64,000 bases of DNA from Octopus bimaculoides. Taxonomy: Eukaryota. The DNA is taken from assembly GCF_001194135.2 (NCBI RefSeq), contig NC_068985.1:21591537-21655536 (forward strand). The letters are read 5' to 3'. The notes below the pieces were generated by a model that saw only the letters and a program-made list of their open reading frames with translations, was not told the origin of the DNA and searched no databases. Shown one piece after another: positions 7,781-61,992 of this stretch; within the stretch, counting starts at the first letter, position 1, and each line of letters starts with the position of its first letter. Both the position numbers and the translations under genes were made by a program.

Positions 7781-7953
7781 GAATATTCGTATTTTAGATA
7801 TAAAACAATAGGATAATCCATTGTTTTATTTCTGTCGTAATATAATGAATTAACTCATAGCAAAATATCAATTAAAAACTTTATTACGTGATAGATGTAT
7901 TTATTCATTGGATCCGAAACTTCGTAGGAAAGTGGGAGGGGGGGATATTCCCA

Positions 7954-7990
7954 TATAAATAAAGCTGCACACGCCATTTCTGTCCTTTAC
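7954..7990 (+). promoter_or_regulatory. Putative core promoter of nucleolin copy A
   Basis: TATAAATA at 7954-7961 followed by pyrimidine tract CCATTTCTGTCCTTTAC at 7974-7990, 66 nt before the ATG. Confidence 0.5.
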
Positions 7991-8055
7991 GCAGAAGTTA
8001 CATACTCATTCACTTCGTTCAACTCACTCGAAGTTAATATTCAGAAGAAAGTGAA

Positions 8056-13393: not shown

Positions 13394-13440
<47 letters not shown>

Positions 13441-13450
13441 NNNNNNNNNN

Positions 13451-13485
<35 letters not shown>

Positions 13486-19400: not shown

Positions 19401-21221
19401 TGTAGATTTATTGTTTTAAAGATGAATCTGTTTATGGTACACCTGTTTCATTGTCTTAGTGTGTTTAAAGATTAACTGTTAAATAACCCAGTAATTTGCA
19501 CAATTTGTCTTTAAACTTTTGTTGTATACTCATTGCATATTAGCTAATAACTCATTTTCTATGCTGGTGCTTAAATTTAAATAGTTTATTTTGTTAAATC
19601 AAAGTTGTTTTATTGACCCACTCTAAATTTTTCTTAGTTATTTTTGGGAAGATATTAAACTTTATTTTAAAAGTTAATTGAAACATGTAGGGTGTATTTT
19701 GGTTATCAGAAAACAGTTCTTAGTTTACTGTATTTGTTTTGGTTTCAGGTTTGCGTATGTTGAGTTTGAGAGTTCCGATAATGTAAAGGATGCACTTGAA
19801 AACAAACAGGGTGTTGAGTGCGGGGACCAACGACTGTTGTTGGATTATGCAAACAGTCCCAAGACTGATTATTCACAACAAAGAGGAAGAGGAGGCTTTA
19901 GAGATGGTAATTTTTATTTGATACTCACTTCAATTGTAATGAAATAGCATTACTTTGGTGCATTTATTAACCTTTTGTCTCTTTTTATTCAAGATGAACC
20001 AGAAGAATCCAGTGTACTTTTAGTAAGAAATCTGTCCTATGATTCAACAGAAAGCTCTTTACGGTCATATTTCAAGGATGCTACTGATATACGATTACCA
20101 TCATTTCCAGATTCTGGAAAGCCAAAAGGGTGTGTAATGACAACTTGTTCACTTTTTGCATTGTGTTGTATTGGATTTGACATTTTATTGCATATGTTCT
20201 TAGTCCATTTTTAAATATGGAACTTTCTCTTTTTTCTGTTTTAGAATTGCCTTCATTGATTTTGATTCTATTCAAAATGCAAAAAGTGCTCTGACTAAAT
20301 TTGATGGTACTAACATTGATGGCAGATCTGTACGGTGCTGTTATGCAAGAGGCAGAAATGATGGTGGTGGAGGTAGAGTAACTTTTTGTTTTGTTACTGA
20401 AGACAGGTGTGGTTGGAGTTTAAAAACTTATGCAGTAGGCATATTGGAAAGGTTTCAGAAAAGTAGATCATGGTATACTGAGTGGCAAAGTTAATTTGGG
20501 CCCAATGAAGATTTTTTTTCCCCCCTTGTATTTGCTATATTGTAGTTATTTAAATTCAGATTGTTTTTACCAAGCCACCAATGGTCTACAATTTCTTATA
20601 GTGACTTCTTACAGTTGTCACTATAACTATTTTGTTGACCATTGACCCATTAGCATTTAATGAAGCCACATTTGGCCAAAATATTATACCAGCCTCTGGT
20701 GCCTTGCCCTGTGATGTCATTATAAAACTTATCAACTACCTCAAAATATGATCTAATTAATTCAAGATAAGTGTGTATTACATTTAACAGTATGCTGAAT
20801 GCTAAAGAGTTAACGTTTGATTTTGTAAGTTCTTCGTCAGCTATTTTTCTTCACACTTAAATACAAGATGATAACACAGATTGATATGTAAATTTCTTTT
20901 CCAGGTTTTGGTGGAAGACGTGGAGGAAGTTTTGGTGGTGGACGTGGAGGAGGTTTTGGTGGTGGCCGCGGTGGCGGAGGTTTTGGTGGTAGACGTGGAG
21001 GTTTTGGTGGTGGACGTGGTGGCGGAGGTTATGGTGGTGGCCGTGGCGGTGGAGGTTATGGTGGTGGTCGAAACAGTTTTGGTGGTATGTATAACATTTT
21101 TCTATTTTGTGCTTTTAATTTACAGGTTTAAAATGGAATGTTCATTTTTCCCTTTGTCTCAACATTTTTTTTTTCTTCTCCAGGAACAGGAAGGAAAAAG
21201 ACTTTCAGTGATAGCGATTGA
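8056..21221 (+). CDS. NCL: Nucleolin-like copy A, 14 coding exons, ~523 aa
   Basis: Exons 8056-8082, 14491-14577, 15387-15441, 16020-16277, 16365-16409, 17003-17074, 18113-18230, 18341-18474, 18585-18720, 19749-19906, 19994-20129, 20245-20372, 20905-21084, 21184-21221. All GT-AG, phases consistent, 1572 nt with no internal stop. Acidic Ser/Glu tracts, bipartite NLS (KKRK...AKKAK), three RRMs (RNP1 RAFAHIDL, KGFAYVEF, KGIAFIDF), six RGG in an FGG-rich GAR domain, C-terminus GRKKTFSDSD. Confidence 0.93.
12048..12358 (+). other. Highly conserved intron-1 non-coding element, copy A
   Basis: 59/60 and 95/97 nt identity to 46420-46479 and 46607-46703; also present inverted at 42029-42339. CpG-rich against an AT-rich background. 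Confidence 0.9.
12572..13069. mobile_element. hAT (Charlie-like) MITE
   Basis: Ends CATGGGGTCACCAAACT / AGTTTGGTGATCCCTG; 8-bp TSD CTCTAGTC at 12564-12571 and 13070-13077 fits the NTCTAGAN preference. Confidence 0.85.
13389..13482. repeat. (TA)n microsatellite interrupted by a 10-N gap
   Basis: Direct reading. Other microsatellites at ~34826-34851 (CA), ~44080-44190, ~50235-50255 (GT), ~60820-60860, ~62653-62672. Confidence 0.95.
15669..15891. mobile_element. TTAA-flanked MITE (piggyBac/Kolobok-like)
   Basis: TTAA at both ends with imperfect inverted termini (TCCTTTAGTGTTCA / TAAATGCTAAACGG). Related copies near 27030-27245 and 54385-54582 (inverted). Confidence 0.5.
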
Positions 21222-27478: not shown

Positions 27479-27762
27479 NNNNNNNNNNNNNNNNNNNNNN
27501 NNNNNNNNNNNNNNNNNNNNNNNNNNNNNNNNNNNNNNNNNNNNNNNNNNNNNNNNNNNNNNNNNNNNNNNNNNNNNNNNNNNNNNNNNNNNNNNNNNNN
27601 NNNNNNNNNNNNNNNNNNNNNNNNNNNNNNNNNNNNNNNNNNNNNNNNNNNNNNNNNNNNNNNNNNNNNNNNNNNNNNNNNNNNNNNNNNNNNNNNNNNN
27701 NNNNNNNNNNNNNNNNNNNNNNNNNNNNNNNNNNNNNNNNNNNNNNNNNNNNNNNNNNNNNN
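27479..27762. other. Assembly gap (N run)
   Basis: Direct reading. Other gaps: 11113-11654, 13441-13450, 49283-49590, 50691-51247. Confidence 1.
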
Positions 27763-27791
27763 AAAAAAAAAAAAAAAAATGGTTTATATAC

Positions 27792-30700
27792 CAATACTGT
27801 TTCGTCCGCCACTATAACCTCTGTTTCGACTATAGCTGCTGCCGTAACCTCCACCACCACTGCCGTAGCCTCCGCCGCCACCATAACCACCACCACCATA
27901 GCCTCCACCGCCACCGTAGCTTCCTCCACTACGTCTACTGCTATAGCCACCTCCGCCATAGCCACCACTACCGTAGCCACCACCACCATAGCCACCACTA
28001 CCATAACCACCACTTCGGCCGCCATAACCACCACTGCGACCACCATAACCGCCACCACCACCACTACTATAGCCACCATAACCTCCACTGCGTCCGCCAT
28101 AACCGCCACTGCGTCTTCCAGCATAACCTGCAAATAAAGTTAAAATTCAGAAAACCATAGCAGTTGACTTTCAAGAACAGGATTTCATCATACTTATATT
28201 GGAACTACAAAAAATGAATTAACTATCAACATTTCCCTGTGTTGACTCGACCCCATAAATGACAACTTTATACTTAGATACCTAAACTTATAAAGGTCTA
28301 ATTATTTAAATATAATTTTAGTAATATGCATGTAGCCTAAAAGCTGCAGAAAAAATCCCGATAAACAATATTACATTATACTGAACACTTTGCCTACCAT
28401 ATGTGTTACTGGTGATTCCCACAGTACAGAACTGATATAATATTTATTCTGTACTGCGGGAGTCACCAGCGACACTCATGGTATACATCAATGTGGTAAG
28501 TTTATATAGTGAATTGAAACATATACATAGTTTTAAAAAATGTTTAAATTTATAACGAAATGAGGTTGCTGGTGCAAAAAGAAAATATGACATAAAGTGG
28601 GTTTGGTTGGCCACGTGTTAGTCAAATTTTACTCAAATACACATCATACACAATTAGTTTCTCCTTTTTTAAAATATCTGACAGAATGTACCTTAACATT
28701 TCATTCACAATAGGTCTTAACAAAATGAGATAATATCAAAAGCTACTGTACCTCGATTTCTGCCATCATTGTCACCTCTGTTTCTTGCAAAACAGCAGGA
28801 AACAGTTCTGCCATCAATATCAGTACCATCATATTTGTTCAAAGCACTTTTTGCTTTTGATACAGACTCAAATTCCACAAACGCAATTCTAAAATAGAAA
28901 TTTTAAAAGATGGAAAATTCCACTTTGAAAATAATTAATTATACCAAAATCAAACAAATAATACACTATATCATGAACAAATGTTAACTTGCTTATAAAT
29001 AACAAAGTCATTTTACACACCCTTTTGGTTTTCCTGAATCTGAAAATATTGGCATTCGTACAGCAGTAACATCTCTGAAATATGATCGCAAAGAATCTTC
29101 TGTTGTCTCATAGGATAGATTTCTCACTAGTAGCACATTGGATTCTTCAGGTTGATCTTAAATTGACAAAGAGAAAAGAAAATACATGCATAAAATGAAG
29201 TTAATTCAAAGTAAATCATTTAATTTCTATCAAATGAAAGTTTAATAAAGGAGAAAAATTACCATCTCTAAAACCTCTCCTTTGCCGTGAAGTACCTCCT
29301 GCATAGTCTAAGTACAATTTTCGGTCCCCACATTCAACCCCTTGTTTGTTTTCAATGGCATCCTTTACTTCTTCAGCAGTATCAAACTCAACATAGGCAA
29401 ACCTGAAGAAACAAAGACACACATATTACATTTAGGAAATAATGTTTTGATATAAAACTTGCTTGTACCAACCCTTACTAGTTAAATTAATGTGCCTTTT
29501 ACATTTGCTAAATGGAAAACTGTGTTGCAAAACACATCTGATACTACTGAAAAGAGAATATCTAAATATGTGATTGTCTAACTGGTAAGCATAATTTCAA
29601 TAAAACCATCTCAGTAAACTTACCCTCTATGCGTATCTCTCTTGCATGGAATTCGGACATTTCGGGCATCGGGAAATATTTCCATCAGACTGTTCCTAAT
29701 ACTCTCTTCTGAATCATCATAGGACAAGTTCTTCACAAATAGTGATTTTGAATCATCTGGAAAAAAGAAAAAAAAAAGTTTATAACTGAAATTATATTGT
29801 TCAGAGAATAGGAAAAGGCATTTTGTATAATTAACTCAAATGTTACCCGAGTATCTGAGACAACTCAAGTTTACCTATTCATACTGAAATCAAGACATTG
29901 ATGTAAATTATTACTGCATTAGTATTAACAATTTCACTAGACAAACACTTGCCGTGTACTGTCCAGTATTCTTATAATGTGAATTTTATTCTCTAATTTT
30001 TTCTAAATCTTTATTTTCCTCTTATTTCCATAATATATTATCTTTAAAACTTTATAAGCTTCAGGTTTAGAAATAAAGAACCTGAAATTGAACAATTTTT
30101 GGATAGCAGCAGATAAAAAAAAAATGTAGCAAACATAGCACATGACAGGTTGAACCAGATGCTTCAAGTTACAAGGGTTTAAATAATGTCAGGCAGCAGA
30201 AGTGAATGCAATGATATCCAGAAAGACAATAGAGTGAAACTTAAAATATTTCTCTTCCAAATTTTTTTTAGAAGAGACCAGACTTCAGTAGGTTTTCTCA
30301 AAACTAAAAAAGAAACCCTGATTATTTACTTTACTTTATTCCATTTCAAAAGCTACATAGAATAACAGCAAAGACTAATTGCTATGCAAAACATAGCAAT
30401 ACATTTGATAGATAGAGCTTGTATATTGTCTTACAAAGCCAATCTAAACTCACAAATATTTTACAATTACATTCATATGCATAGAGAAGATAAACATACC
30501 CTTATCTCTGTCTGTTCTTTCTGGTTTTGATGCTCCCATGGGCTTACCCTTTTCAAATATCAATATAGACCCTTTAAATTCAATATCCTGCATGGCTAGG
30601 ACTGCCTCAAGGTCATCAGGATTAGCTAAGTCGATATGTGCAAACCTATAAAAGAAGAATACAAAAAAAAATGAATGACAAAGAAGTAGCAAAAAGCACA

Positions 30701-33700
30701 GAAAAACAAACATAAAATGGGTAATAAATAAATCTAATACACACTTTTTATTGTCTTGTTTACGGACAGATGCAAATTCAATTCCTTTCTTCTTAAGAAA
30801 TTTCTCAAATTTCTCAGCAGTCACTTCCAGAGGAACATTTCTACACAGAACTGTCACTGGTTCTATAATGGATTAGAAAAAGTATAACATTCAGTCTTCA
30901 TAACTTAAATCAATACTCATATGGAAAACATTTTAAATTAATCTCCAACAACAAAAACTAATACATATTCTCAGGAGACAAAAATACACTTTTATGGTGG
31001 TACGTTATAAAATCATTCGAGTGAGGTCGTTGCCAGTGCCGCTGGACTGGCTCCCGTGCAGGTGGCACATAAAAAGACACCTTTTGAGCGTGGCCATTGC
31101 CAGTACTGTGTGACTGGCCCTCATGCCGGTGGCACGTAAAAGCACTCACTACACTCTCGGAGTGGTTGGCGTTAGGAAGGGCATCCAGCTGTAGAAACTA
31201 TGCCAGATCAGATTGGAACCTGGTGCAGCCTTCTGGCTTGCCAGTCCTCAGTCAAATCGTCCAACCCATGCTAGCATGGAAAGCGGACGTTAAACGATGA
31301 TGATGATGACTTACATTTCAACAGTAATGCTGGGTGATTTTAATGGCATCATACAAATATACAACCCCTCGGCATAGGTTACTCAGTAGTGACTTCAAGG
31401 CACAGGCATGAAAGAAACCAAGAAGCAAGCCAGTTTGGAAAAAAGGACACAGAAGCCTAAGGATCCTTTGAATAGTTAGAGATTTAGAGACATCCTAACT
31501 GAAGCATTTAATGAGAAAGAGGAGGAGTTACAGACGTGGGACAGTTTATAACTGGAAGTTCCTACGAGACAACTTGCTGAGAGCCATACACCAAATTTAT
31601 GGTTAGTGCAAAATCCCAACTGGACCTAGGTTAACGTGATGATGGAACAGTGTAGTTGACAGGGCCATTAGAACAAAGAAACAGGCTTCGAAGAACTGGA
31701 AGTGTGGTGGTAGCAAGAAGCTACATCAGGCAGCTAGGAGGCAGGTATACTTAGCTAGGGGGTGAAGCAGAAAGGAAAAAAGCTTGCCAATGTTATGCAG
31801 CGCAAAGGCCAGTGGCTTGAAGTGCTTTTTCTTGCAAGTCAGTGTGCCAGGGAAAATTGTGATATTGTTGGAGAGAAGTGTATTCACATGGATGATAGTT
31901 CACCTGCAACGAAAGAAGCTTGAAAGTGCCACTATGAAAGGCTACTAAATGTAGCAAACTTTCGGGAGGAGGAGAGTCTACCTACTGTGGATACAACAGA
32001 GGGACCAGCAATCAAAATAGACAGGAGTCTGATAGATGAAGCCATGAAGACCAGAAAAGCCCCCAGCCTTTCAGGAATCACTGTTGAGATGCTTAAAATA
32101 TCTTGCAGTGTGGGTTATGGCTTAATCACCCATATAGTTAATCAGGTTGTACATGAGGGAGTCATCCCTAAAGATTGGTGTAGCAGCATCATAGCCAACT
32201 GCTACAAAGGTAAAGGTGATACCTAAGACAAATAATTACAGAGCTGTAAATTTTTTAGATCAGGTATTGAAAGTTACAGAGAGGGTCATAGCCCAACTAA
32301 TTAGGAAGAGAGTTAGTGTAGATGAGATGCAATTTGATTTTGTGCCAGGGAGGAGCACCACTGGTGCTATATTTCTGGTAAGGCAGCTGCAGAAGTACCA
32401 AGCCAAAAATAACCCTATATACTTGACTTTTGTTGACATAGAGAAAGCTTTCAACAGGGTTCCCTGCTCCCTTATCTGGTGGCCAATGCATAAACTAAGG
32501 ATAGATGAGTGGTTTGTGAGAGCTGTACAAACTATGTACAGGGATGCTGTCAGTAAGGTGATGGTTGGCAACAAGTATAGCAATGAATTCAGAGTACAAA
32601 TAGGGGTCCACCAAGGATTGGTGCTTAGCACCCTCTTGTTCATCAGTCCTCTAGGCAATAACAGAGGAATTTAAGTCAGGCTGCTGATGACCTTGTTCTT
32701 ATAACTGAATCACTACCAGAACTGGAAAAGAAATTTCAGATGTGGAAGCAAAGTCTAGAATCAAAGGGCCTTAGAGTTAATTTAATAAAAACCAAAGTCT
32801 TAGTAGAAAAGAGGACAAATTAGAAATCCCTTCAGGTAGATGGCCCTGCTCAATATGTAGAAAAGATGCAGGTAGAAACTCTGTAAGATGTACCTGGTGC
32901 AAGCTATGGATACACAAGAAGTGCAGCAATATCAGAGGAAGGTTAACAGGGAAAATAGTATTTGTGCATGGCAGATGCACAAGTACAATAAACACTAAAA
33001 ATGCACAGAAAATAGACTCCATCAAATGGTAGGTGGGGGGTACCTAGAAGTAATTGATAGTTTCCCCTATCTAAATGACCAAGTCAGCAGTGGAGGTGGA
33101 TGCTTCAAGAGCATAGCTGCCAGAATAAGAAGAGGCTGGGCAAAGTTCAGAAAGCTCCTACCTTTGTTGGTAACTAAAAGCCTCTCCCTCAGAGTAAAAG
33201 GCAGATTGTATGATGCCCGTGTGCAAACAGCCATGCTACACAGCAGTGAAATACGGGCTGTGACTGCTGAGGACATGCATGAGCTTGAAAGAATTGAAAC
33301 TAGTATGCTTTGCTGGATGTGCAATGTCAGTGTGCATGTATGACAGAGTGTGAACATCTTGAGTGAAAAGTTAGGTACGAAACATCAGATGTAGTGTGTA
33401 AGAGAGACGACTGTGCTGGTATGGCCATGTGGTGCATATGGATGAGGACAGCTGTGTAAAGAAGTGCTGATCTCTGTGGAGGGAATCTGTGGAAGAGGTA
33501 GACTCAAGAAGACATGAGACGAGGTGGTGAAACATGATCTTTGAACATTAGGCCTCACAGAAGCAATGACAGGTGACCGAGACCTTTGGTGATATGCTGT
33601 GCTTGAGAAGAATTGTCAAGTCAAGCCAAGTGAAATCATAGTCATGGCTGATGCTGGTGTCATGTAATTGGCACCTGTGTCAGTGGCACATAAAAAGCAC

Positions 33701-36700
33701 CCATTACACTCTTGGAATGGTAGGCATTAGGAAGGGCATCTAACTGTAGAAACCATGCCAAATCAGACTGGAACATGGTGCAGCGTTCCAGCTTAATAGT
33801 TCAAGTCAAACTGTCTAACCCATGCCAGCATGGAAAGCAGATGCTAAATGATGATGATGATGAATATAAAGCTTCAAAATCACACAAAAATGCTGATGGA
33901 TTACCAAAACTTCAGATCCAAGAGTCAATATAAAGAGTATCAGATTTAGTTTACAGGATTGTCAAGTATTGGATGAATTTGATTTACCACCATCATCCTG
34001 ATTAGGAGCCACTGTCATTACTACAATTTCTGAACACTGATGTGATACTTGCCATCATAAACAGTCATCATTATTGTTATTTTAAATTACATAATAACAT
34101 TTTATTAAATTGATACATGTTGTCATACAAAATTCATATTATTTTTATTGTTGAATGCTAAACAATTTATTATTAATTTGAAATTGGAATCAACCATTGA
34201 CATATCTGACAATTTAATTATTTTTGTTCTTATTTTTATTTATTCATCTATTATTATTGGCACAAACTGCTGAAGTGAGCACTGCTATATTTCATCATCT
34301 TCATTTAATGTCCATTTTCCATGCTGGCATGGGTTGGATGGCTTGACAAGAACTGGCAACACCAAGAGCTGCACCAGATTCCATCTGTTTTTGATTTGGT
34401 CTCTACAGCTGGATGCCTTTCCTAATGCTGGATGCCTTTACAGCTGGTTGCTTTTACAGAGTGCACTGGGTGCTTTTTTATGTGGCACCAGCTCTGGTGC
34501 TTTTAAGATGTCACCAGCACCAGTGCTTTTTACATGGCTTGTCTACACATATAAAGTGCCACCATCATCTTGCAGGGAATATGATTATTAGAACAATTAT
34601 TGATTCAAAACCCCAACATCGTTGTTGATGTAAGAGTTAAAACTGAAATTATCTTATTTCTTAGTTGATACAGCAATAAAGATTCAGCCTCAGCCTACTT
34701 TCATAACAATCAAAAAAGGTGCCAGCAGTAACTCACAAACAATGTTGAGTATGAAATCTTTTTTTTATTAAAACACAGTATTTAGAAGTCAACAATACAA
34801 AATATTCTCTAAGTAGACTTCATCATTCACACACACACACACACACACACACTAATCTTTCAAAATTCAAATCATCTTACCATCATCAACTTCTTTCTTA
34901 CGCTTCTTGGCTTCTCTCTCACCTGGTGTAGTTAAAAAAAAAAAAGAAAATTATAAGTACATCCAATATCATTAAGATTCTATTTCAAACTATTTGATGA
35001 TGGAAACAAAACCATGTCCATCATAATTATGAAATACTAACAAACATTCATCAACAGAGAAATTAAAGTATATACAAATTTAACTTTATGTACAAACCAT
35101 ACAAATTTATTTGTAGTCAGTATATTAAATAGCATTATGCAAACATGTAGCAAACATTTTGAATATGCAACACCAATTAAATTAGCAAATAAAAAGTGAT
35201 CAAACTGAGAGAAACTACTGAATGGTAGGAGTAGAGAAAACAAGCCAACAGAAATGACTTACCATTAGATTTTCCATTAGCTTTTGAATTAGGGGAATCA
35301 TCTGGTTCTAAAGCAGAAGATGAGTTTTAGTTAAATATTAGAAAAGAAACATATTCCTCAGTGAAACTATCTACCAAGATCTAGTTTATTTTATCAGCAA
35401 TCAGAATAAAAGACCATCATATACCTTCATTAGAATTTTCCTCGTTAGAATTCTCTTCATCAGAATGACCTGACTCAGCAGCTGGTGTAGTATTTTTTAC
35501 TGCTGCTTCATCCTCCTCCTCCTCATCGTCCTGTGCCTCCTCACCTTCATTACTCTCACTCTCCTCATCTTCAATACTTTCCTTCCCATCTGCCTCACTG
35601 TCGCCAAATTCTTCATCTCCTTTTGCTGCATACAAAACAAAGACAGACAACATTGAAGACTGAATCAGTATAATGTATTCAAGGCAAAAAAATCCACTAT
35701 CTTACAATACTAGTATCTCTTATAAACTACAACAGTCTACAAAGTAATACACTATATTTCACATATCAAAACACATTGATATGATTTACAACAAATCCAA
35801 ATTACGAAAAAATATCTAAATGTGTGGGAAATTCAATTAGCAGGTTGTTGGCACTCCGTCGTGGGTTCCAGTTGATCCGATCAACGGAACAGCCGGCTCG
35901 TGAAATTAACGTGCAAGTGGCTGAGCACTCCACAGACACGTGTACCCTTAACGTAGTTCTCGGGGATATTCAGCGTGACAAGGCTGACGCTTTGAATTAC
36001 AGGCACAACAGAAACAGGAAGTAAGAGTGAGAGAAAGTTGTGGTAAAAGAGTACAGCAGGGTTTGCCACCATCCCCTGCCGGAGCCTAGTGGAGCTTTAG
36101 GTGTTTTCGCTCAATAAACACTCACAACGCCCGGTCTGGGAATCGAAACCGCGAGTCCGTTGCCCTAACCACTGGGCCATTGCGCCTCCACTTCAATTAG
36201 CAGGTATGACTACATTATCAAGTAATTCAATTTTCACTTGCTTAGCTTCATCTCACTGTGAGTCACTTAAGTGTCATCTACCACAGTCTTGGATAGAGAG
36301 AAGTTGTATTACAGAAACTGGACAAACTGAAACTTGTGTGACCTGGGTTAACACCAAAACCTGGGCTCTCACTTTAGCAGAATCCACTCTGCTAGAAGCA
36401 ATTGGAATAATTTTTCCTCACCAGCCTCTGAAGCCCTAAAAAAAAAAAGCCACGTAGACTGTTCTTGGAAAATAAATACAAAGAAATAAATAAATGACAA
36501 CACAACAGAACACAATATCTTTCAGTAACTGTTTCCTATCCCACCTAAATGTGTTATCTCAGTCTGAAACTCTAATAGTGCATGAGAAAATGTTTGTCAT
36601 TAAGCCAGGACGTATTGCAAAATTGTGTATGAGTGAATTATTTCTGTAACGTAAGTCTAATGAAGCACAAACACAGTGAGTAATTGAAATACAAATATCT

Positions 36701-39700
36701 TAACCAAATCTTACCAGGTGAATCGTTATTTTGTTTTAACACATTAACATTTGGAACGTCTGCAACTTCCTAAAAAAAAAAAAAGAAAAGGAAGAAATCA
36801 AAAAACATATATAAAACAATAAAAATTCATATAAAGAAATAAATTTTTTTAAATCAACAGAAACATCTGACACTGTGAGTCTGTTGACAGCAATTGCACC
36901 AACTTTTGTAGAAAATTAACATCAAGCCACTCATACCTCTTCCTGCCAGGTTAAAAAATTTAGAGCTACTACAACAATAGTTAAATCTAGAGAGAGCATA
37001 GAGATGCTAAAGTGTTGTGAATAAGATCTAAGATGGAATGGGGTCTCAGCCTGCTTCCTTAGAAGCAAGGAACACAGGTACAAATTCCCCTGGGTTAATA
37101 GCAGCAATGATGTGGGTGGAAAAGGCATGTTGTTGGCAGAGAAATGTATTGATAAAATAACTGAGCCACACAGAATATGTAATAGAATGATTAAGTTAAG
37201 TCTTGTCTTGGACAAAATGAGAGACAGTTATCTCTGTATATACCCTACAATCAGTTAATAGATGAACAAAAGGGCTGGTTCTGAGACTCTCCTACAGAAT
37301 ACCTCAATAGTGAATGACTAACCTCCTTATAAAAGCTGGTGATGTTAATGGATATGTTGGGTAATACCATGTCTTTTGTGGCTATGGTTATTGTTTAAGG
37401 AATAAGAAAGAATCAAGGCCTTGGAATTCTGTGACACTGATGACCTAACAATTTGCTAACACCAACATCATGAAGAGGACCAATCAAGTGGATACACAAG
37501 CTAAATTGATTTCATGCCTTCCTGGAGGTGGGGCATCATCATCATCGTTTAACGTCCGCTTTCCATGCTAGCATGGGTTGGACGATTTGACGGAGGACTG
37601 GCAAGCCAGAAGGCTGCATCAGGCTCCAATCTGATCTGGCAGAGTTTCTACAGCTGGATGCCCTTCCTAATGCCAACCACTCCAAGAGTGTAGTGGGTGC
37701 TTTTACGTGCCACCGGCATGAGGGCCAGTTACACGGTACTGGCAACGGCCACGCTCAAAAAGGTGTTTTTTACGTGCCACCTGCATGGGAGCCAGTCCAG
37801 CAGCACTGGCAATGACCTCGCTCGAATGATTTTGAAAAATGTAATACCTAACATAGACAAGTACCCAGAGTAAGAGCTAGGAAAACTCATAGCATAAGCC
37901 AACTTGAAGATGTAGACACTCAAAGAGCCAATGACCAGTCATAGGTTCAGAGAAGTGCTAGACACCTACCTACAACAGGGGACAATAGAGTTCTTATGAT
38001 ACAAAATACTGAGGGATACAAACCAGATCTGTGGCTGGTGTAAGCCTATAGCTAGATAGGTGATATAATGGTGGAGTACTGTAGATACTTGAAGCAAAGA
38101 GACAGGTTTGGAAAAATTGCAGGAAAGAGACAACAAAGAGCAATACCAAGCAACCAGAAGAGAAGCTAAACATCAGATATTCAGAGCTGAAATGAAGAGG
38201 TTTTCATAGGTTCGGGAATGTGAAGTCTTTCAGATTAGAAGGTAGTAAATGAGAGAAAATCAAGATGTCATTGAGAAAAGTATACAAAATGATAATGGTA
38301 CACTTACTCTAAATGAAATGGAAAGAGGCAAAGAAGTACTATTATAAGAGACTGTTAAATGTAGAGAATGTACAGGAGAGAGAGGGTGTATTCCATGTAA
38401 ACCCTGCAAAGTTGACAGTATTATATAGTTGTAAGTGAAATTAAGGATATAAAAGGCAGATCATGGAAATTGCAGAATGAATTAATTAGAAAGAAAATTA
38501 ACCTAGATGAGATGCATTCAATTTTGTGCTACAAATTTGTACCATCTCTCTAGTGAAATAACTGTAGAAGTACTTAGATAGGAGTAAACCACTTTGCTTG
38601 GCATTTGGCAACCTGGAGAAGTCCTCTGACAAGGTTCTAAGTTCTGTGATCTGGTGGTCAATAAGAAAGACAAATGGTTTGCAAGGGCCATACAATCCAT
38701 ATACAAAGGCATCTATTATAATCTTCCAGGTTGTAAACAGAGGACTTTAAAACTGGCTGTCTTTGAGACATATTACTGTATATTGATGATCTACTTCTTA
38801 TATTTGAATCTATAGAAGATTTAGAGAAGAAATTCCAGACCTGGAAATGAAATCTAGAATTGAGATTTCTCAAACTAAATATGATAAAGACTAAAACTTT
38901 ATTAAGTAGGAATTCCATTCAGTATACTTAATGTAAACTATGGGCATAGAAGGGATGCTGTAAGACCATAGACAGACTGATAGAGAAGGTAGACTTCATT
39001 TGTAGCAGATGTATAAAGTTAGTTAGTAATAATACCCATGAAATACATTTTTTTCAAATGCTGAGAAGTCTCCTAGATGTAGTTGAAGTGGTGTATTGAA
39101 AGCATAAGTGACTAGAGTAAGAAGGGAAGTATAGAAAGTTCAGGAAGCTATTATTTCAGTTGGTAACAAAGGGTTTCTCTTTCAAAACAAAGAGCAGAAT
39201 GTATGGTGATTGTATAGTGAGACAGAGACCTTAAATGCAGAGCATCTATATCTGGAAAGAAATCAAATGAACCTGCTTTACTAGGTAAGTGTGCAAGAAA
39301 GAAGATTGTACTGGTGTGGGTATGTAATGTATATGAAAACGGTCAGACTTAGTGATGAAGTGGTGAAGACTGATCTCAAGAAGTTAAACTTAAGGAAGAA
39401 GTTGACAAAGAACAGTGATAAATGGGAACACACAGTGCTCAGAAGACCTGGCCACTATGCAAGCATGGCAAAACAGATTTTTAAAATAATGGTGATGGTG
39501 ATAGTAGCTGGAATATATATCATTGGACCTTTTGCCTATTATATTCCGACCAAACCTCCATTTACCACCATATTCATTAGCCTCTCATCTATCATATTCA
39601 CTTCACTATGCTGCCTATATAACCAGAGATGTCATTCGATTTGTTTGTATTCAATCCACTCACCACCATACATCTACCACGCCACTTCTCTTCCATCATG

Positions 39701-42700
39701 ATGCTTGTGTTAACATGCATGGAATCTTCACCCTCAACTGTTTACCACCATTCTCCACACATGTAATTCTTCATTGACTTTTATCAGTTTCACTCCCATC
39801 CATCTCTAATGCTGCCCTTTAGTCACTCTCTTTTACCCAGTTTTATTACTTGACACTGCTCATGCTGTTCTCTATTCAATCTCTTTATCAATAACAACAA
39901 ATAGTCATCAGTGTCTCTCTTCTATTACTCCTTCCCCAACCATTCTATTACTGTTTCACTCCATCACAATCATACTACCTCTCTCTCCTCTTTCAACCTC
40001 TTGATGAACGCATCTAATCACACTCTTGGTTATGTTTGTTATGAAAGAACAGAGACTACATAGAACTCTTTAGTTTTGCAAGGTATAAGACAACTTTTCT
40101 AATGCTGGTACTACAATAAAATACACTTTTATAAACACACTATAAAGTGATTGGATAACGAAGACAACACAGAGTAGAGAGGATTTTAGTCATACCAAGT
40201 ACATAACCTCTCTGATGCTGGTCCCATGATAAAATGCACCCAGTACACCTAAAATAGTTGGTGTTGGGTAAGGCACCCTGCCAGAGGAAGCCCCCCCCCC
40301 CCAAATGAGATGTACAAGCAAGATAATATCTAGGCATGTAGTGATTCTGAGACAATGATGATATGTCCAAACCTTGACAACATGGAAAGGGAGGCATAAA
40401 ATAAATGATGATAAGTATATTAATATTTATTAACTTTGAAATAAGAAAACAAAAATAGAATATATGAACTTACAGCATCCATTTCTTCTGGTTCTGAAAA
40501 AGACTCCTCATTAGATTCTTCAGCTTCAGCTGACTTTTTTGGATTCTAGTTCAAATTATAAAAGTCAGTAATTGAAACAAATATTCAAACTCAAGTACAT
40601 CATAGAGAAAATATAAGCAAACAAAATAAGTATATGTTAAATCTCTGAACGAGGTATTAAGTATATTTTGTATAAAATTATTGTACCCCAACTGAATGCT
40701 TCACAAAAGCCTATGATACTTCTGAACTGCAGTAGCCTTCTAAGCCTATTTCTCACCACAGCATTACTTATCCAGCGATTCTATGTTGTTTTTTTTTTAA
40801 TATATATACTAGATCTGAATTCATTACCGCCAAGAGGTTCTGGTCTCACTATTAGAGAACTCGTGTTTAAGGGACTAATTAGTATTGAATTTATTTATCA
40901 AATACTCTCTAGCGTTGGTCGATTTCCTACCACGAAAGCATTTAACACGTTCTGCTCTTGAATCTTGCTTCCACATGATTGGCAAAGAACGTCATAAAAT
41001 CGTGTTTTCCATAGCAATACTTTTTAAAACATATTTAATGAAAGTTCATCTCTTAACAGACTACGCTGGAAGCATCTCAATCTTATGTTCACCGCCCTTC
41101 CTCCACATATCTCCCCAAAATATAGAAAATGCAGAGAAATTATTTCAATAAAACATCACTAATACTACTATCTACACACTGATCAAGATCGGTTGGACCT
41201 TATGATAGTCATGAAACTCATCAGCATTAGAAAATAAAATTCACTAAAATACGAAGTGACCATAGGCAATATTAAATAAAATGAAAAAAAAAAACATGAA
41301 AAATATTTCTTTGTCGTTAAGTATGAATTATTAATGAACGAGACAAATATAATAGTTCATAAGCTGAGAATAACTGCTTAAAAATTCAGTAAGATGCCTG
41401 AATTTCGTGAACTATTTTAAGGATCAACCAAACATTTTACAATGACAAACGATATATTATTTTAACACAATGGTTAACAGATTCTTTGTGCTAGAAAGAA
41501 TATCACAGTTCGAGAAAAGGGTTTATGAAAAGAAAATATGCAACATTGATTGCTCAAAATTTTCAGTTAATTTCACGTTTTGAAAATCTTATCTTCGTTA
41601 CGTTTCTTGTTATTTTAATTGCAAATGTCATGGTTGATAAGACATCCTATTTCGATTCCTTGCTCACTTATCTGAAGTGGTTTGAGACAAGAAAACCAGA
41701 AGTAAACACAACTCATAAGCTACCCAAACAGACGTATCTTCGTATTTGGGGCCCACATTTTAATGTTACATCAAAAGTTAACAAATTGAAATAAATAAAT
41801 AAAAATTGATATATAAACAGGCTATTCTACAAGATGTATCACTCACACAATTGCGTAAACTTTTTGATACAATGGTGTGTTGTACAATAAATAGTTTGTG
41901 CTAACAGAACGAACTCTCGTGAGAATAATTCTGACCATGACAAGAAATCATTTCTCATTCATGACAAAGCAATTAAGATAACCGAGCAACGTGCAATGAC
42001 AGACAACATAGAATTTAACAGTATATAACTGAAAAAGTGCATCATGTTTACCTCATACCCCTTTTCATGGCGCAGCTTAGCCTTCACCGTAGACTCACAA
42101 TACCGGTTAGTGGGTGTTGTTGTAAGACCAGGTTGACACCAGCTTGCACACAAACCAGGAAATCCATTGCAGCATCCAGAATCATGTGATAGTCGATAAC
42201 CACTTGATGTTTGCACAGTAACCATTTATCGAAACACGGCCAAATCAAAACGATATCGCAGCCAATGGCTTATTTTCAGTAGCTCTCGAGCCAATGGCAT
42301 TACTGACCGACACACGAGGAACCACGACAGCCAAATTCACCGCATGGGTGAAAAGACGCACGTACCAAAGCGACACCATAATTGCGAAAATTTACCGAAT
42401 CGAGATCTTGTTTTGTTTAATCAGTATAATGTAATGATTAATCATTATTACAAATTAGATCCTCTAATTCTGAACAAGACCTAAATAATGATATAATAAA
42501 AGTCTTCCACTAATCGCAACGATAAAAGCTTTAAACGTTATTGTTTCTAAAGGGTAATTAGAGAAAAAAATATTAGAATTTCATAACCATATGTACTCAG
42601 GAATGCATTTTATGTAGTAATATAATAATACACAAAGAAGTCCTAACTTCTTAAATCTATCGCCGTATTACGTTCTGCTAATTTCAGTTGACCTATATTA

Positions 42701-43247
42701 GAATGTGTATGTAGTCGTCTTTGTCAGTTCAAACTCGTGGATCAAGTGCCACCGTTGAATTCTCACAGCTTCTACAAACAATGGCCTCTTTTATTTACAA
42801 ACTAAACCAAGTTGTTTAAAATTAAGGATGCATATATATATTATATATAAGAATATACATAAAATGATATAGATAAATGCATATATCTGCTTTTCCCATT
42901 TCTAGGAAATAAGCAATCAGATGAAGATGTGAGAAATTTAGGTTAAAACAAGTACTTGATATTTTTCATTTTAAGCAGAATCCGTGCATTTTGTCATAAG
43001 ATGAATATATATAAATACATATAAATATTTATATATATTTATAATTTCCTAAATAATGTAGTTATACGAGATCTTATAGTTATTTGTGATTTGTGGGAGA
43101 TTTAGAAATATTAACACTCCCATTTCCTTCAAGATTAATATTGTAAATATAACCCGTTTACAAATAAATTTTATGTATTCAAAAGATTTTAGCCTCTAAA
43201 TAAAACAGGAAACTATCGTAACATACCTTATTCTTTCTAGCAGCCAT
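27792..43247 (-). CDS. NCL: Nucleolin-like copy B, 13 visible coding exons (~527 codons); final exon presumed in gap 27479-27762
   Basis: Exons (minus strand) 43247-43227, 40545-40474, 36769-36715, 35625-35425, 35307-35263, 34922-34881, 30862-30745, 30645-30500, 29756-29624, 29402-29263, 29156-29021, 28888-28752, 28127-27792. GT-AG with the same phases as copy A and an open frame. 3'UTR homology resumes at ~27460-27300. Confidence 0.9.
31330..33863 (+). mobile_element. RTE-clade LINE, 5'-truncated and frameshifted, antisense in copy B intron 6
   Basis: Endonuclease remnant (LGDFNG), RT segments (NYRAVNFLDQVLKV, QFDFVPGRSTTGAIF, FVDIEKAFNRVP, ADDLVL), C-terminal region and (TGA)n tail. Confidence 0.9.
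35846..36191 (-). mobile_element. Full-length tRNA-derived SINE, family 2
   Basis: Minus strand begins TGGAGGCGCAATGGCCCAGTGGTTAGGG (A box) with GGTTTCGATTCCC (B box); 14-bp TSD TTCAATTAGCAGGT at 35832-35845 and 36192-36205. Confidence 0.9.
36930..39480 (+). mobile_element. Older, heavily decayed RTE LINE with a nested tail insertion
   Basis: AGDVNGYVG endonuclease remnant near 37325, RT-like fragments 38450-39450 paralleling the 31330-33863 copy, nested (-) tail copy at ~37534-37830. Confidence 0.65.
42029..42339 (-). other. Conserved intron-1 non-coding element, copy B
   Basis: Reverse complement of the copy A and C elements, in the same orientation relative to its host gene; donor-like GAG|GTAAAC with exon end at 42052. 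Confidence 0.9.
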
Positions 43248-43944
43248 TTCACTTTGTTTTCTGGGATAATATACCGAATAAAAAGTTCAGCTGCTATGAA
43301 TGTTCTCTGTAACTGTAGCTCGAAGCTGTACGTACACTTTACTTAGCAGTGGCAAGGTATAGCCACCACCATGTAGTTTCGTATCTATTGAATAAATATC
43401 TCCAGCATTTGATTTGATAATTAATTTTAATTTTATTACCATTTATTGCTGGATAATAAAAGCTGAAGTTATTTCATTGAACCCTTTACTCAATGTAAAT
43501 ATATTTATTGAAAATCTGCTGGAGTAATATCAAATTACGAGTGACAAAATGGGCGCTAACTTGATGTCGTAACTGAAGAAATAGTAATTAAATAAGTAAA
43601 ATTATTTTCTTCATTGTCCATAGTAACGAGTAAAAAAATCATTATAATAAAACAAATGACTAATGAAGATAAAAGGACCGGGAGACAACCCTGGAAATTT
43701 GATAAATTAAAATTAACTGAATATTGAATGTAGTGAAGAGTGAGCTGGTACGATGACAACTCTGAACATGTTTTAATATTATTAGACCTCATCAGTGAAG
43801 CATAAATTAACCATAACAACATCTTACAAGGACTGGAGAGAGTATAGGATTTCAAAGAATTAACACTAAGTGATTGAGATAAATTGAAACAATGATTTGA
43901 AAAATACATAAATACACTTGCTACAGTAAAAGACAGGGGACGGA

Positions 43945-60808: not shown

Positions 60809-60843
<35 letters not shown>

Positions 60844-61992
60844 CATACATACATACATACGATGGGCTTCTTTCAGTTTCCGTCTACCAAATCCACTCAC
60901 AAGGCTTTGGTCGGCCTGAGGCTATGTAGAAGATACTTGCCCAAGGTGCCACGCAATGGGACTGAACCTGGAACCATGTGGTTGGTAAGCAAGCTACTTA
61001 CCACACAGCCTATTTTTTTATCACACTTTAACCTTTAAGTCCTTTTATTACCATATTTCTCTTGAATCACACTACCTTTGTTTTAATTATTTTTGAAAAT
61101 AATGAATTTATTAACATAACTTAGTCAGGCGTGGATTTATAGTAAAAAGTTTGCTTCCAAGCTTGGGTTCAGTTCCACTGTGTGTCACCTTGGGCGATTA
61201 TCTTCTACTATAGCCTCAGGCCAACCAAAGCCTTGTGACTGGATTTTTGTAGACAGAAATTGAAAGAAGCTTGTCGTATATATGTGAGTGCGTGTGTGTG
61301 CATTTGTATCCCACCACCAGTTAACTAGTGTTGGTGTGTTTACACCCTGTAACATAGCAGTTTGGCATAAGAGATTAATAGAATAAGTACTAGGTTTTAA
61401 AAAAAAGAAGTCCTAGGGTCAATTCATTTGACTAAAATTCTTCAAAGTGGTGCCCAGCATGGCCACTGTCTAATGACTGAAACAAGTAAAAGAGAAAAGA
61501 TTATTATTAAGTTAATGTATGGAATATAAATTAAGATGAAATTTTGATGCAAAGTTTAATTTAAAACAAGAAATTTCTATCATAGAACCAAGGGCAGTTT
61601 TAAGTGGATTTGTATTAAAAAGGTTAAACCTTGTATAAAACAGATTGTTATTAGATTGTTTTCAGGAGTTAAGACATGTGATTTTCTTAGTTTGAAATTT
61701 GATTGTGCAGGTTATAGTGGTGGACGTCGTGGTGGTGGCAGTGGTGGTTTTGGCAGACGTGGTGGTGGTGGTGGTGGCAAACGTTATGGTGGTGGTGGAG
61801 GACAAAGTAGCTTTGGAGGTATGTAAGACCTTTTTCTTTCTTTTTTTTTTGATCTTGTGTTTTGTATTTGAAGTTTGAGATAAATAAATGAATATTAATT
61901 TACTTCTGATATTTTCTAAACAATTTTTTTTTTTTGCTTGTTTGTTTTTTAAAGGAACAGGGAAGAAAAAGACCTTCAGTGATAGCGACTGA
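45573..61992 (+). CDS. NCL: Nucleolin-like copy C, 14 coding exons, ~491 aa
   Basis: Exons 45573-45593, 52271-52360, 54007-54058, 54958-55191, 55317-55370, 55737-55808, 57758-57875, 57966-58102, 58234-58369, 58632-58774, 59836-59971, 60096-60232, 61711-61818, 61955-61992. GT-AG, 1476 nt, open frame. NLS KKRKKEMADGKNAKKAK resembles vertebrate KRKKEM...AKKQK; three RRMs; short GAR; ends GKKKTFSDSD. Confidence 0.93.
46420..46703 (+). other. Conserved intron-1 non-coding element, copy C
   Basis: As copy A, with private deletions of ~25 nt and 6 nt in the middle. Confidence 0.9.
46804..47460. mobile_element. Foldback-type inverted-repeat element
   Basis: 24-bp TIR with one mismatch (46804-46827 / 47437-47460), ~190-bp inverted arms (~46940-47125 / ~47260-47436) and a second nested inverted pair (~46821-46890 / ~47150-47223). 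Confidence 0.85.
47800..49270. repeat. AT-rich inverted-repeat family (GATTCTGAAAAA / CACGTTTT / GCTAGAAATAACAGCCAAATC motifs)
   Basis: ~47940-48150 is an inverted copy of ~49030-49260. Related segments at ~8520-8760, ~10780-11110, ~49590-50690, ~51250-51600 and ~56360-56790, often next to assembly gaps. Confidence 0.6.
57630..57711 (+). repeat. 36-bp tandem duplication (2.3 copies) in copy C intron 6
   Basis: ATTGGTTATTGTTCATTATTTACTGCTGACTATATC twice plus ATTGGTTATT. Confidence 0.9.
59600..59810 (-). mobile_element. RTE LINE 3' coding-end fragment
   Basis: Reverse complement parallels ~33370-33600; a similar fragment lies at ~53470-53665. Confidence 0.6.

What the first reader, a model, noticed from the sequence alone, without database searches (positions are those of the whole stretch)
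27792..28127. Copy B has replaced the RGG/Phe GAR domain with an RSGG/Tyr-rich low-complexity domain
Seen: exon 13 of B is 336 nt (A 180, C 108) and reads GYAGRRSGGYGGRSGGYGGYSSGGGGYGGRSGG... It has no RGG, five RSGG, about 18 Tyr and no Phe; A has six RGG with FGG spacers. Known: RGG is the PRMT1 methylation and RNA/G4-binding motif, [G/S]Y[G/S] repeats drive FUS/hnRNPA1-type condensation, and RS dipeptides can be kinase targets. Inference: B may have switched from methylation- to phosphorylation-regulated condensation and may localise differently.
Basis: partly seen in the sequence, partly recalled or inferred. Interest (0 to 1): 0.75.

Follow-up and report, generated by a model that had tools for sequence, protein, structure and literature searches.

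The report
Octopus nucleolin paralog with RSGGY tail
One of three neighbouring octopus nucleolin genes has swapped the usual arginine-glycine tail for a longer, conserved glycine/tyrosine/serine tail built from R-S-G-G-Y units; this is a natural change in the sequence rules of a disordered RNA-binding tail, and its cellular effect is untested.

Summary
The window is Octopus bimaculoides and holds three nucleolin-like genes: A (+, 8056-21221), B (-, 43247 to about 27.5 kb) and C (+, 45573-61992). Exon 13 of B (27792-28127, - strand, 336 nt) has AG/GT borders, is in frame, and reads GYAGRRSGGYGGRSGG... It has 0 RGG, 5 RSGG, 18 Tyr and 0 Phe. The matching exons are 180 nt in A (six RGG, Phe spacers) and 108 nt in C.

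B is not a decaying copy. All 13 visible exons are intact. Exon 14 lies in the assembly gap 27479-27762, as the O. sinensis sequence shows. Argonauta hians has a clear B ortholog (99% bootstrap) with the same tail type: 0 RGG, 8 RSGG, 19 Tyr, 1 Phe. Between Octopus and Argonauta, dN/dS is 0.12 in the RRMs and 0.14 in the tail, with dS about 0.7-1.

B therefore fails a published GAR pattern inside exon 13. It is also not an SR-type RS domain, and it lacks the CIRBP TNPO3 core motif. Other invertebrate nucleolins retrieved keep RGG/Phe tails.

The proposed switch from methylation to phosphorylation control, and a different localisation, are plausible by analogy but untested. No expression data could be reached. 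I rate it a new variant of a known kind, of moderate interest.

The parts
27792..28127 (-). Exon 13 of paralog B. It encodes the G/Y/S-rich tail with five R(R)SGG(Y) units, 0 RGG, 18 Tyr and 0 Phe.
   Evidence: Translation. Splice sites and frame. Motif counts. Shuffle test. Imperfect 15/21/30/75-nt internal repeats. All Ser codons are AGY.
27479..27762 (.). Assembly gap of 284 N, flanked on both sides by T-runs in gene orientation. It most likely hides intron 13 and exon 14 of B, which reads G|TGKKRTYSDSDR* in O. sinensis.
   Evidence: Alignment of the gap flanks with O. sinensis L001. The flanks are near-identical, and about 220 nt carrying exon 14 lie between the two T-runs. No exon-14-like sequence is seen beyond the gap.
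28752..28888 (-). Exon 12 of B: second half of RRM3 plus NRGDNDGRNR, the only stretch of B that fits a di-RG pattern.
29021..29156 (-). Exon 11 of B: first half of RRM3.
29263..29402 (-). Exon 10 of B: second half of RRM2.
29624..29756 (-). Exon 9 of B: first half of RRM2.
30500..30645 (-). Exon 8 of B: second half of RRM1.
30745..30862 (-). Exon 7 of B: first half of RRM1.
34881..34922 (-). Exon 6 of B: basic NLS-like EAKKRKKE. It is shorter than in A and C because it lacks KNAKKAKVD.
35263..35307 (-). Exon 5 of B: a 45-nt exon, homologous to the alternative cassette exon of A (16365-16409).
35425..35625 (-). Exon 4 of B: the acidic stretch.
36715..36769 (-). Exon 3 of B.
40474..40545 (-). 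Exon 2 of B. It ends ...SEPEEMDA, a B-specific signature shared with the Argonauta B ortholog.
43227..43247 (-). Exon 1 of B (ATG, MAARKNK). It lies head-to-head with exon 1 of C, 2.3 kb away (45573).
20905..21084 (+). GAR exon of paralog A (180 nt; six RGG, Phe spacers), used as the canonical comparison.
61711..61818 (+). GAR exon of paralog C (108 nt; short and intermediate, with 2 RGG and 1 RSGG).

Best explanation
B is a functional, anciently retained third member of a tandem nucleolin-like gene family in octopods. It keeps the family body: an acidic N-terminus, a KKRKK nuclear-localisation-like patch, three RRMs and a short conserved C-terminal peptide.

Its disordered tail has been remodelled. 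What was a GAR domain (RGG repeats with Phe spacers) is now about twice as long and is a Gly/Tyr/Ser low-complexity domain. Every Arg-containing unit in it reads R(R)-S-G-G-Y.

Origin (inferred from codons and repeats). GGY->AGY transitions turned R-G-G-G into R-S-G-G. TTY->TAY changes turned Phe into Tyr. Slippage or unequal exchange expanded 15-nt and 21-nt units (GGYGS, GGRSGGY).

How it most likely works (inferred). The tail acts as a multivalent Tyr/Arg 'sticker' domain of the hnRNP-A/FET/CIRBP type, with about 18 Tyr and 12 Arg against 9 aromatics and 11 Arg in A. It lacks the di-RG context that PRMT1-type methylation and GAR-specific partners use. It places a phosphorylatable Ser next to each Arg. 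As a result, B's self-association, RNA and partner binding, and probably its nuclear import or sub-nuclear partitioning would be tuned differently from A, with Ser (or Tyr) phosphorylation rather than Arg methylation as the likely control.

Shown here: gene structure, intactness, tail composition, orthology, conservation and purifying selection, predicted disorder, and failure of the GAR pattern.

Not shown here: expression, modification, condensation, localisation.
For: Gene intactness:
- All 13 visible exons are intact with canonical AG/GT borders and no stop codons or frameshifts.
- The exon structure matches the 14-exon Argonauta ortholog.
- Pfam finds three RRM_1 stretches.
- The 5' region and an upstream element are conserved with A and C.

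Orthologs:
- Argonauta hians P0013, annotated 'nucleolin-like isoform X3', groups with B at 99% bootstrap. It sits head-to-head with the Argonauta C gene, as in the window.
- Its tail has 0 RGG, 8 RSGG, 19 Tyr and 1 Phe.
- O. sinensis has the same exon-13 end plus an intact exon 14.

Selection between O. bimaculoides and Argonauta:
- RRMs: dN/dS 0.12.
- Tail: dN/dS 0.137 at dS about 1.
- N-terminus: dN/dS 0.41.
- The first 30 tail residues are almost identical.

Pattern beyond composition:
- No shuffle of 20,000 reaches the observed RSGG count in either species.
- All tail Ser codons are AGY, 18/18 and 14/14.
- Internal 15/21/30/75-nt repeats are present.

GAR pattern: the published pattern covers 41-48 aa of A tails, but only the exon-12 NRGDNDGRNRG in both B orthologs.

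Disorder: in the AF2 model of the Argonauta ortholog the RRMs have pLDDT 84-92, and the tail has pLDDT 30-40 with no secondary structure.

Literature:
- Tyr is a stronger driver of phase separation than Phe (10.1101/2021.01.01.425046).
- SRPK1 phosphorylates isolated SR/RS serines in the CIRBP RGG region, and this suppresses phase separation and TNPO1 binding. Methylation and phosphorylation antagonise each other there (PMC8562343).
- The R/S/Y-rich region of CIRBP is an import signal regulated by Ser/Tyr phosphorylation (PMC12075686).
- The nucleolin GAR determines localisation (PMC8521312).
Against: - No transcript or protein evidence for B could be obtained. No O. bimaculoides or O. sinensis B protein came back from three database searches. 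The word-index search is demonstrably leaky, though: one search missed P0013-P0016, which one search then found.
- Exon 14 is unseen in the window because of the gap.
- The RS dipeptides are isolated, so this is not a classical SRPK/SR-domain substrate.
- The TNPO3 core motif of CIRBP is absent.
- Three RG dipeptides remain, so some methylation is possible.
- dN/dS in a repeat region depends on an ambiguous alignment, and composition-level constraint alone can lower it.
- Paralog C already has one RSGGY and a weak GAR, so the contrast between B and A is one end of a graded series rather than a clean switch.
Confidence: 0.55

Rival explanations
1. The B tail is a functionally equivalent variant of a GAR domain. 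It would still be a basic, Gly-rich, disordered RNA/G-quadruplex-binding and nucleolus-partitioning tail, constrained only in overall composition. The three paralogs would then differ mainly in where and when they are expressed, and RS and Tyr would carry no special regulatory meaning.
For: - Net charge per residue is similar: B 0.09, A 0.13.
- The tail start and the terminal peptide are homologous across A, B and C.
- A tails already mix Tyr with Phe, and O. sinensis A and the C copies already have one GRSGG.
- The B and C promoters are duplicated head-to-head and could have diverged in regulation.
Against: - The order R-S-G-G-Y is kept far beyond what composition predicts in two lineages at dS about 1: no shuffle of 20,000 reaches the observed count, and RGG is absent in both.
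- Phe is purged even from the terminal peptide (KKTFSDSD -> KRTYSDSD).
- Every other invertebrate nucleolin-like protein I retrieved keeps RGG/Phe. This suggests RG is normally under constraint and that B escaped it for a new constraint.
Confidence: 0.3
2. The main role of the RSGGY tail is as a non-classical nuclear import signal and chaperoning site of the CIRBP 'RSY' type. It would be bound by transportin-3 and/or transportin-1 through Arg and Tyr, and released on Ser/Tyr phosphorylation.
For: - The solved CIRBP RSY peptide (PDB 8CMK chain C, [35 protein letters not shown]) contains RS(x)SGGY and RSSGGSY units. These are close to B's RSGGY and RRSGGSY.
- Tyrosines and an arginine are the TNPO3 contacts, and phosphorylation blocks binding (PMC12075686).
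Against: - The motif that paper scanned for, [YWF]-R-x(2,3)-[YWF]-x(2,3)-[YWF], is absent from all A, B and C proteins.
- B has none of the Asp residues of the CIRBP core.
- B keeps a classical basic patch (EAKKRKKE), which could serve import on its own.
Confidence: 0.1
3. B is a pseudogene or an assembly artefact. Under this view the tail is a neutrally drifting or mis-assembled simple repeat next to a gap.
For: - The exon lies 30 nt from an N gap, and exon 14 is missing from the window.
- No O. bimaculoides B protein was returned by the protein searches.
Against: - The 13-exon reading frame is intact with canonical splice sites.
- Independent assemblies of O. sinensis and Argonauta hians have the same gene and tail.
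- dN/dS is 0.12-0.14.
- The gap is explained by two homopolymer runs that flank exon 14 in O. sinensis.
Confidence: 0.03

Closest known systems
Nucleolin (NCL/Nsr1 family): acidic N-terminus, RRMs and a C-terminal GAR domain
   Same: - Acidic Ser/Glu/Asp N-terminal stretches, a basic KKRKK patch, tandem RRMs and a Gly-rich disordered basic tail.
- A 14-exon layout shared with paralogs A and C, which NCBI names nucleolin.
- Vertebrate nucleolins are the next best hits outside cephalopods, at E about 1e-42.
   Different: - Three RRMs, not the four of vertebrates.
- The exon-13 tail has no RGG and fails the di-RG GAR pattern.
- Tyr replaces Phe throughout.
- The tail is about 1.5-2 times longer than in A.
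CIRBP C-terminal RSY region (non-classical TNPO3/TNPO1 import signal; SRPK1-regulated RGG/RS crosstalk)
   Same: - R/S/Y/G-rich disordered tail C-terminal to an RRM.
- Units RS(x)SGGY and RSSGGSY, against B's RSGGY and RRSGGSY.
- Isolated RS/SR serines beside Gly-rich sequence are kinase targets that weaken phase separation (PMC8562343).
   Different: - The CIRBP region is 35 aa, Asp-rich and adjacent to a genuine RGG region.
- Its TNPO3 core, Y-R-x-S-Y-D-S-Y, is absent from B.
- B has about 110 aa with long GGGGY spacers.
hnRNP A1/A2/A3 and FET (FUS/EWS/TAF15) low-complexity domains with [G/S]Y[G/S] repeats
   Same: - 17 [G/S]Y[G/S] motifs.
- Tyr and Arg as the putative stickers.
- Many hnRNP A-type proteins appear once the tail is included in the query.
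   Different: - hnRNP A tails also carry Asn, Gln, Phe and RGG boxes. FET prion-like domains are Gln/Ser-rich and nearly Arg-free, with separate RGG regions.
- B interleaves Arg as RS within the GY repeats.
- There is no homology outside the RRM fold.
SR-protein RS domains
   Same: RS dipeptides in a disordered tail of an RRM protein.
   Different: B has only 5 isolated RS and 2 SR dipeptides, with no RSRS runs. The tail is 55% Gly. It is not an RS domain by composition.

Membership tests
Nucleolin family | N-terminal acidic stretches plus a basic NLS-like patch | tested here: met
   The B N-terminus has ...EDEESESNEGEEAQDDEEEEDE... and EAKKRKKE. It has fewer Ser and Lys than A.
Nucleolin family | Tandem RRM domains in the central part | tested here: met
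   Pfam RRM_1, three stretches, E = 6.5e-35. AF2 gives three RRM folds in the Argonauta ortholog.
Nucleolin family | C-terminal GAR domain (repeated RGG/RG, usually with Phe) | tested here: not met
   B has 0 RGG. The GMF pattern G(0,3)-X(0,1)-R-G(1,2)-X(0,5)-G(0,2)-X(0,1)-R-G(1,2) (PMC9957100) matches only NRGDNDGRNRG in exon 12 and nothing in exon 13. This holds in both O. bimaculoides and Argonauta B. A tails are covered over 41-48 aa.
Nucleolin family | Common descent with annotated nucleolins | tested here: met
   - 67-76% RRM identity to paralogs A and C, which are annotated as nucleolin.
- Same exon layout as A and C.
- Vertebrate nucleolins hit at E about 1e-42.
Nucleolin family | Nucleolar localisation and a role in pre-rRNA processing | not testable with these tools
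   This needs imaging or biochemistry.
SR-type RS domain | Runs of consecutive RS/SR dipeptides | tested here: not met
   The 5 RS and 2 SR dipeptides are all isolated, and there is no RSRS.
CIRBP-type RSY import signal | Aromatic-Arg core [YWF]-R-x(2,3)-[YWF]-x(2,3)-[YWF] (PMC12075686) | tested here: not met
   No match in any A, B or C protein. Only the looser RS(S)GG(S)Y units are shared.
Prion-like / hnRNP-A-type Tyr-sticker low-complexity domain | Disordered, Gly/Ser-rich, with regularly spaced aromatic residues | tested here: met
   - 18 Tyr in 116 aa and 17 [GS]Y[GS] motifs.
- Tail pLDDT of 30-40 with no secondary structure in the ortholog model.
Prion-like / hnRNP-A-type Tyr-sticker low-complexity domain | Phase separation driven by the domain | not testable with these tools
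   This needs an in vitro or in vivo assay.

The most novel reading that the evidence does not exclude
Octopods have kept a nucleolin paralog for a long time (dS about 0.7-1 between Octopus and Argonauta) in which the tail's rules were rewritten: RGG/Phe, controlled by methylation, became RSGGY, controlled by phosphorylation. This would send the same RRM body to a different condensate or compartment, for example nucleoplasmic or cytoplasmic/neuronal RNA granules instead of the nucleolus. The A/B/C cluster would then be a natural, evolution-validated tail-swap experiment.
Probability: 0.25. Interest if true: 0.6.

Novelty: new variant of a known kind. Interest (0 to 1): 0.4.

Why it matters
The rules that link the sequence of disordered RNA-binding tails to behaviour come mostly from mutagenesis of a few human proteins. 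These rules concern Arg versus Lys, Tyr versus Phe, and RG methylation versus RS phosphorylation.

Here three neighbouring paralogs share near-identical RRM bodies but carry three different tails: a canonical RGG/Phe GAR, a short intermediate, and a long RSGGY/Tyr domain. The unusual tail is conserved under purifying selection in two octopod lineages.

That makes it a compact natural system for asking whether swapping RG for RS and Phe for Tyr changes methylation, phosphorylation, condensation and localisation. It also shows that a 'nucleolin' annotation can hide a protein without a GAR domain.

Tried and rejected
1. Looked for exon 14 of B beyond the gap (26900-27478, - strand). Nothing resembling KK(T/R)(F/Y)SDSD was found. 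The O. sinensis comparison shows that it lies inside the gap.

2. Searched for an annotated or transcript-derived B protein from Octopus:
- RRM query and full-length query: neither returned any O. bimaculoides or O. sinensis B.
- Tail plus exon-14 query: 8000 candidates, none significant.
- This absence is weak evidence, because one search also missed P0013-P0016.

3. Tried to reach the O. sinensis B locus. The 10-kb flank of the A ortholog ends inside exon 13. Exact look-ups of P0001 and P0014 found no contig. A 601-aa gene is called there, but its sequence could not be retrieved.

4. Followed a Logan contig with B-type RRM1 exons (L004, SRR11869391). It is only 920 bp and genomic, with the intron retained, so it is not expression evidence.

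5. Searched PDB by sequence with the tail. Only a chance match to a Gly-rich tail came back, at E = 0.012.

The Argonauta ortholog was used instead.

7. Considered pseudogene, artefact, SR-domain and strict CIRBP RSY-NLS membership. All were rejected on tests.

8. Searched the literature for octopus nucleolin paralogs and found nothing relevant. No Octopus-Argonauta divergence time appeared in the paper I checked, so I give dS instead.
Full report
**What the window is.** The 64-kb window is AT-rich eukaryotic DNA with five N gaps. Protein searches identify it as Octopus bimaculoides. Annotated 'nucleolin' and 'nucleolin-like' proteins of that species map to it at 100% identity. It holds three paralogous nucleolin-like genes:
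- A on the + strand. The ATG is at 8056 and the last exon is 21184-21221. It corresponds to P0015 and the older XP_014779553/4.
- C on the + strand. The ATG is at 45573 and the last exon is 61955-61992. It corresponds to P0001.
- B between them on the - strand. The ATG is at 43247, and the last visible exon ends at 27792.

A and B lie tail-to-tail. B and C lie head-to-head, 2.3 kb apart.

**Checking the observation.** The exon is preceded by ...ttatttgcag and followed by gtatataa. It joins exon 12 in frame (...GRNR|GYAGRRSGG...) and is 336 nt long.
- From GRNRG onward the tail has 63 Gly, 18 Tyr, 18 Ser, 12 Arg and no Phe. It has no RGG, five RSGG and 17 [G/S]Y[G/S].
- The equivalent exon of A is 180 nt (20905-21084), with six RGG, seven Phe and two Tyr.
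- The equivalent exon of C is 108 nt (61711-61818).

Every number in the finding is therefore right.

The arrangement is not a by-product of composition. No shuffle out of 20,000 reaches five RSGG, and RGG = 0 occurs in 1.9% of shuffles.

The opposite strand carries only the mirror-image ORFs expected of a GGY repeat.

**Is B a real gene?** I rebuilt B completely. It has thirteen exons, all with AG/GT borders, one continuous frame, no stop codons and no frameshifts. They encode MAARKNK..., acidic stretches, EAKKRKKE, three Pfam RRM_1 domains and the tail.

The region upstream of the ATG aligns with those of A and C. The alignment includes a shared element, GATATTTATTCA-T--AT-CGAAACT.

The window stops 30 nt after the exon-13 donor at an N gap (27479-27762). 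This gap is flanked on both sides by T-runs in gene orientation. In Octopus sinensis the same two T-runs bracket about 220 nt. That stretch contains an acceptor and exon 14, G|TGKKRTYSDSDR*. The sequences flanking the gap are nearly identical between the two species. Exon 14 of B is therefore hidden by the gap, not missing.

Argonauta hians:
- It has a 552-aa protein, P0013, annotated 'nucleolin-like isoform X3'. Its gene has 14 exons of nearly the same sizes as B.
- The gene lies head-to-head with the Argonauta C-type gene. It shares B-specific signatures such as ...SEPEEMDA.
- In a neighbour-joining tree of the RRM region, O. bimaculoides B and Argonauta P0013 group with 99% bootstrap.
- RRM identity between the two genera is 84% for B. 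It is 77% for C and 64% for A, so B is the most conserved of the three.
- The Argonauta tail reads GYGGRRSGGYGGRSGGYGG...GRSGGGYGNRSGGYGNRSGGYGG...GRRSGGYGG.... It has 0 RGG, 8 RSGG, 9 RS, 19 Tyr and 1 Phe. No shuffle of 20,000 reproduces this.

O. sinensis:
- It shares the last 33 residues of exon 13 with two amino-acid differences.

Selection and outgroups:
- Nei-Gojobori estimates between O. bimaculoides and Argonauta B give dN/dS of 0.12 for the RRMs, 0.137 for the tail (dS about 1.06) and 0.41 for the N-terminus.
- The tail alignment is partly ambiguous, but its first 30 residues are almost identical.
- All other invertebrate nucleolin-like proteins I pulled from a full HMMER scan keep RGG/Phe tails. 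The RSGGY tail is therefore a derived state that predates the Octopus-Argonauta split.

**How the tail arose (inference from sequence).**
- All Ser codons of the tail are AGT or AGC in both species, 18/18 and 14/14. That is one G->A transition from the GGT/GGC Gly codons that dominate GAR exons, so R-G-G-G becomes R-S-G-G in a single step.
- Phe to Tyr is one TTY->TAY change. It has happened even in the terminal peptide, where KKTFSDSD in A and C is KRTYSDSD in B.
- Tandem Repeats Finder reports imperfect 15-, 21-, 30- and 75-nt periods at 70-94% match. The 21-nt consensus encodes GRSGGYG.
- A single GRSGG(F/Y) unit already exists at the start of the tail in O. sinensis A and in C. It is a plausible seed.
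- 'Replacement' therefore means point changes plus unit amplification inside the same exon, not acquisition of a foreign exon.

**What it is and is not.** B is a nucleolin-family member by descent and body plan, but it fails the family's C-terminal hallmark.
- GAR: the published pattern (PMC9957100) covers 41-48 residues of the A tails. In both B orthologs it covers only NRGDNDGRNRG, encoded by exon 12.
- SR-type RS domain: not met, because the RS dipeptides are isolated.
- CIRBP TNPO3 core motif: not matched. The solved CIRBP RSY peptide (8CMK chain C) does have very similar RS(S)GG(S)Y units.
- Composition: it resembles hnRNP-A/FET Tyr-rich low-complexity domains. hnRNP A proteins flood the hit list once the tail is part of the query.
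- Structure: AlphaFold2 on the Argonauta ortholog gives three confident RRMs. It gives a tail at pLDDT 30-40 without secondary structure.

**Most likely mechanism.** The following steps are inferred, not shown.
- The tail is a disordered multivalent Tyr/Arg sticker domain. It has twice the aromatic valence of A's GAR, and Tyr is a stronger driver of phase separation than Phe (10.1101/2021.01.01.425046).
- It has lost the RG context used by PRMT1-type methylation and by GAR-dependent partners. In mammals these partners set nucleolin's localisation (PMC8521312).
- Each Arg is now followed by a Ser. In CIRBP, isolated SR/RS serines next to Gly-rich sequence are phosphorylated by SRPK1. This weakens phase separation and transportin binding and antagonises methylation (PMC8562343). 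Ser/Tyr phosphorylation of its RSY region blocks TNPO3 binding (PMC12075686).

The main rival is that B's tail is a functionally equivalent GAR variant and that the paralogs differ mainly in expression. The pseudogene or artefact reading is essentially excluded.

**Limits.**
- No expression evidence for B was reachable.
- No O. bimaculoides B protein came back from the databases. That search is leaky, though: one search missed four close homologs that one search found.
- The full O. sinensis tail lay just outside the retrievable flank.
- Squid, cuttlefish and Nautilus could not be examined.

**Verdict.** The tail is real and conserved, and it is a new variant within the nucleolin family. The functional switch is plausible and easy to test. 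Interest is moderate.

Noticed in passing
window 27479-27762 (N gap), with T-runs at 27763-27779 and 27459-27478: The gap sits between two homopolymer runs. In O. sinensis those runs flank exon 14 and the stop codon of the B ortholog. Any gene model built on this assembly would therefore lose B's true C-terminus.
   Followed up: yes
window 20938-21183 (paralog A): The older RefSeq models XP_014779553/4 (P0004, P0005) use a GT inside the GAR exon, at 20938. This splices out 147 nt of RGG repeats. The newer model P0015 keeps the full 180-nt exon. Either this is a modelling artefact or there is a real GAR-shortened isoform.
   Followed up: partly
window 16365-16409 (A) and 35263-35307 (B, - strand): A 45-nt exon (ESEESPKPKLNGNAD / EPDDSPNSKANGKSN) is a cassette exon in A, included in isoform X1 and skipped in X2 and in P0015. 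The O. bimaculoides C model lacks it, but O. sinensis C and both B orthologs have it.
   Followed up: partly
window 43227-43430 (-), 45390-45593 (+), 7880-8082 (+): All three paralogs share an upstream element, GATATTTATTCA-T--AT-CGAAACT, about 150 nt before the ATG. They also share near-identical sequence around the start codon. A and C have a pyrimidine-rich run (CTGTCCTTT / CTTCTTTT) where B has GCTACAGTT. This might mean that A and C, but not B, are TOP-like mRNAs. The transcription start sites are unknown.
   Followed up: no
window 32216-32671 (+), inside intron 6 of B: This is a reverse-transcriptase fragment (Pfam RVT_1, E = 2.9e-16) lying antisense to B. It is part of a degenerate retroelement that inflates intron 6 to about 4 kb.
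   Followed up: partly
window 16737-16880, 31031-31309, 33675-33865, 37545-37754, 53100-53373, 58880-59090: Copies of a short interspersed repeat occur in introns of all three paralogs, in both orientations. They are 70-82% identical and share a core that translates as ...LALGRASSCRN...SDW.LVQPSGLP....
   Followed up: no
B orthologs: L001 23328-23370 (O. sinensis exon 14); P0013 C-terminus: The conserved terminal peptide KK(K)TFSDSD of A and C is K(K)RTYSDSD in both B orthologs. The Phe-to-Tyr change therefore extends beyond the repeat region.
   Followed up: yes
P0137 (from, unknown invertebrate): This is a nucleolin-like protein with three CCHC zinc knuckles inserted in the middle of its GAR domain, another unusual tail variant in the family.
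   Followed up: no
versus 33 (method): The word-indexed protein search with the RRM region alone missed P0013, P0014, P0015 and P0016, which are 62-85% identical. The full-length query then found them. Absence from that tool is therefore weak evidence.
   Followed up: yes
L004 (Logan SRR11869391 contig, 920 bp): This is a genomic contig from another octopus sample carrying B-type RRM1 exons 7-8 with the intron (FASVRKQDNKK...GKPMGASKPERTDRDK). It suggests that B orthologs exist in further species.
   Followed up: partly
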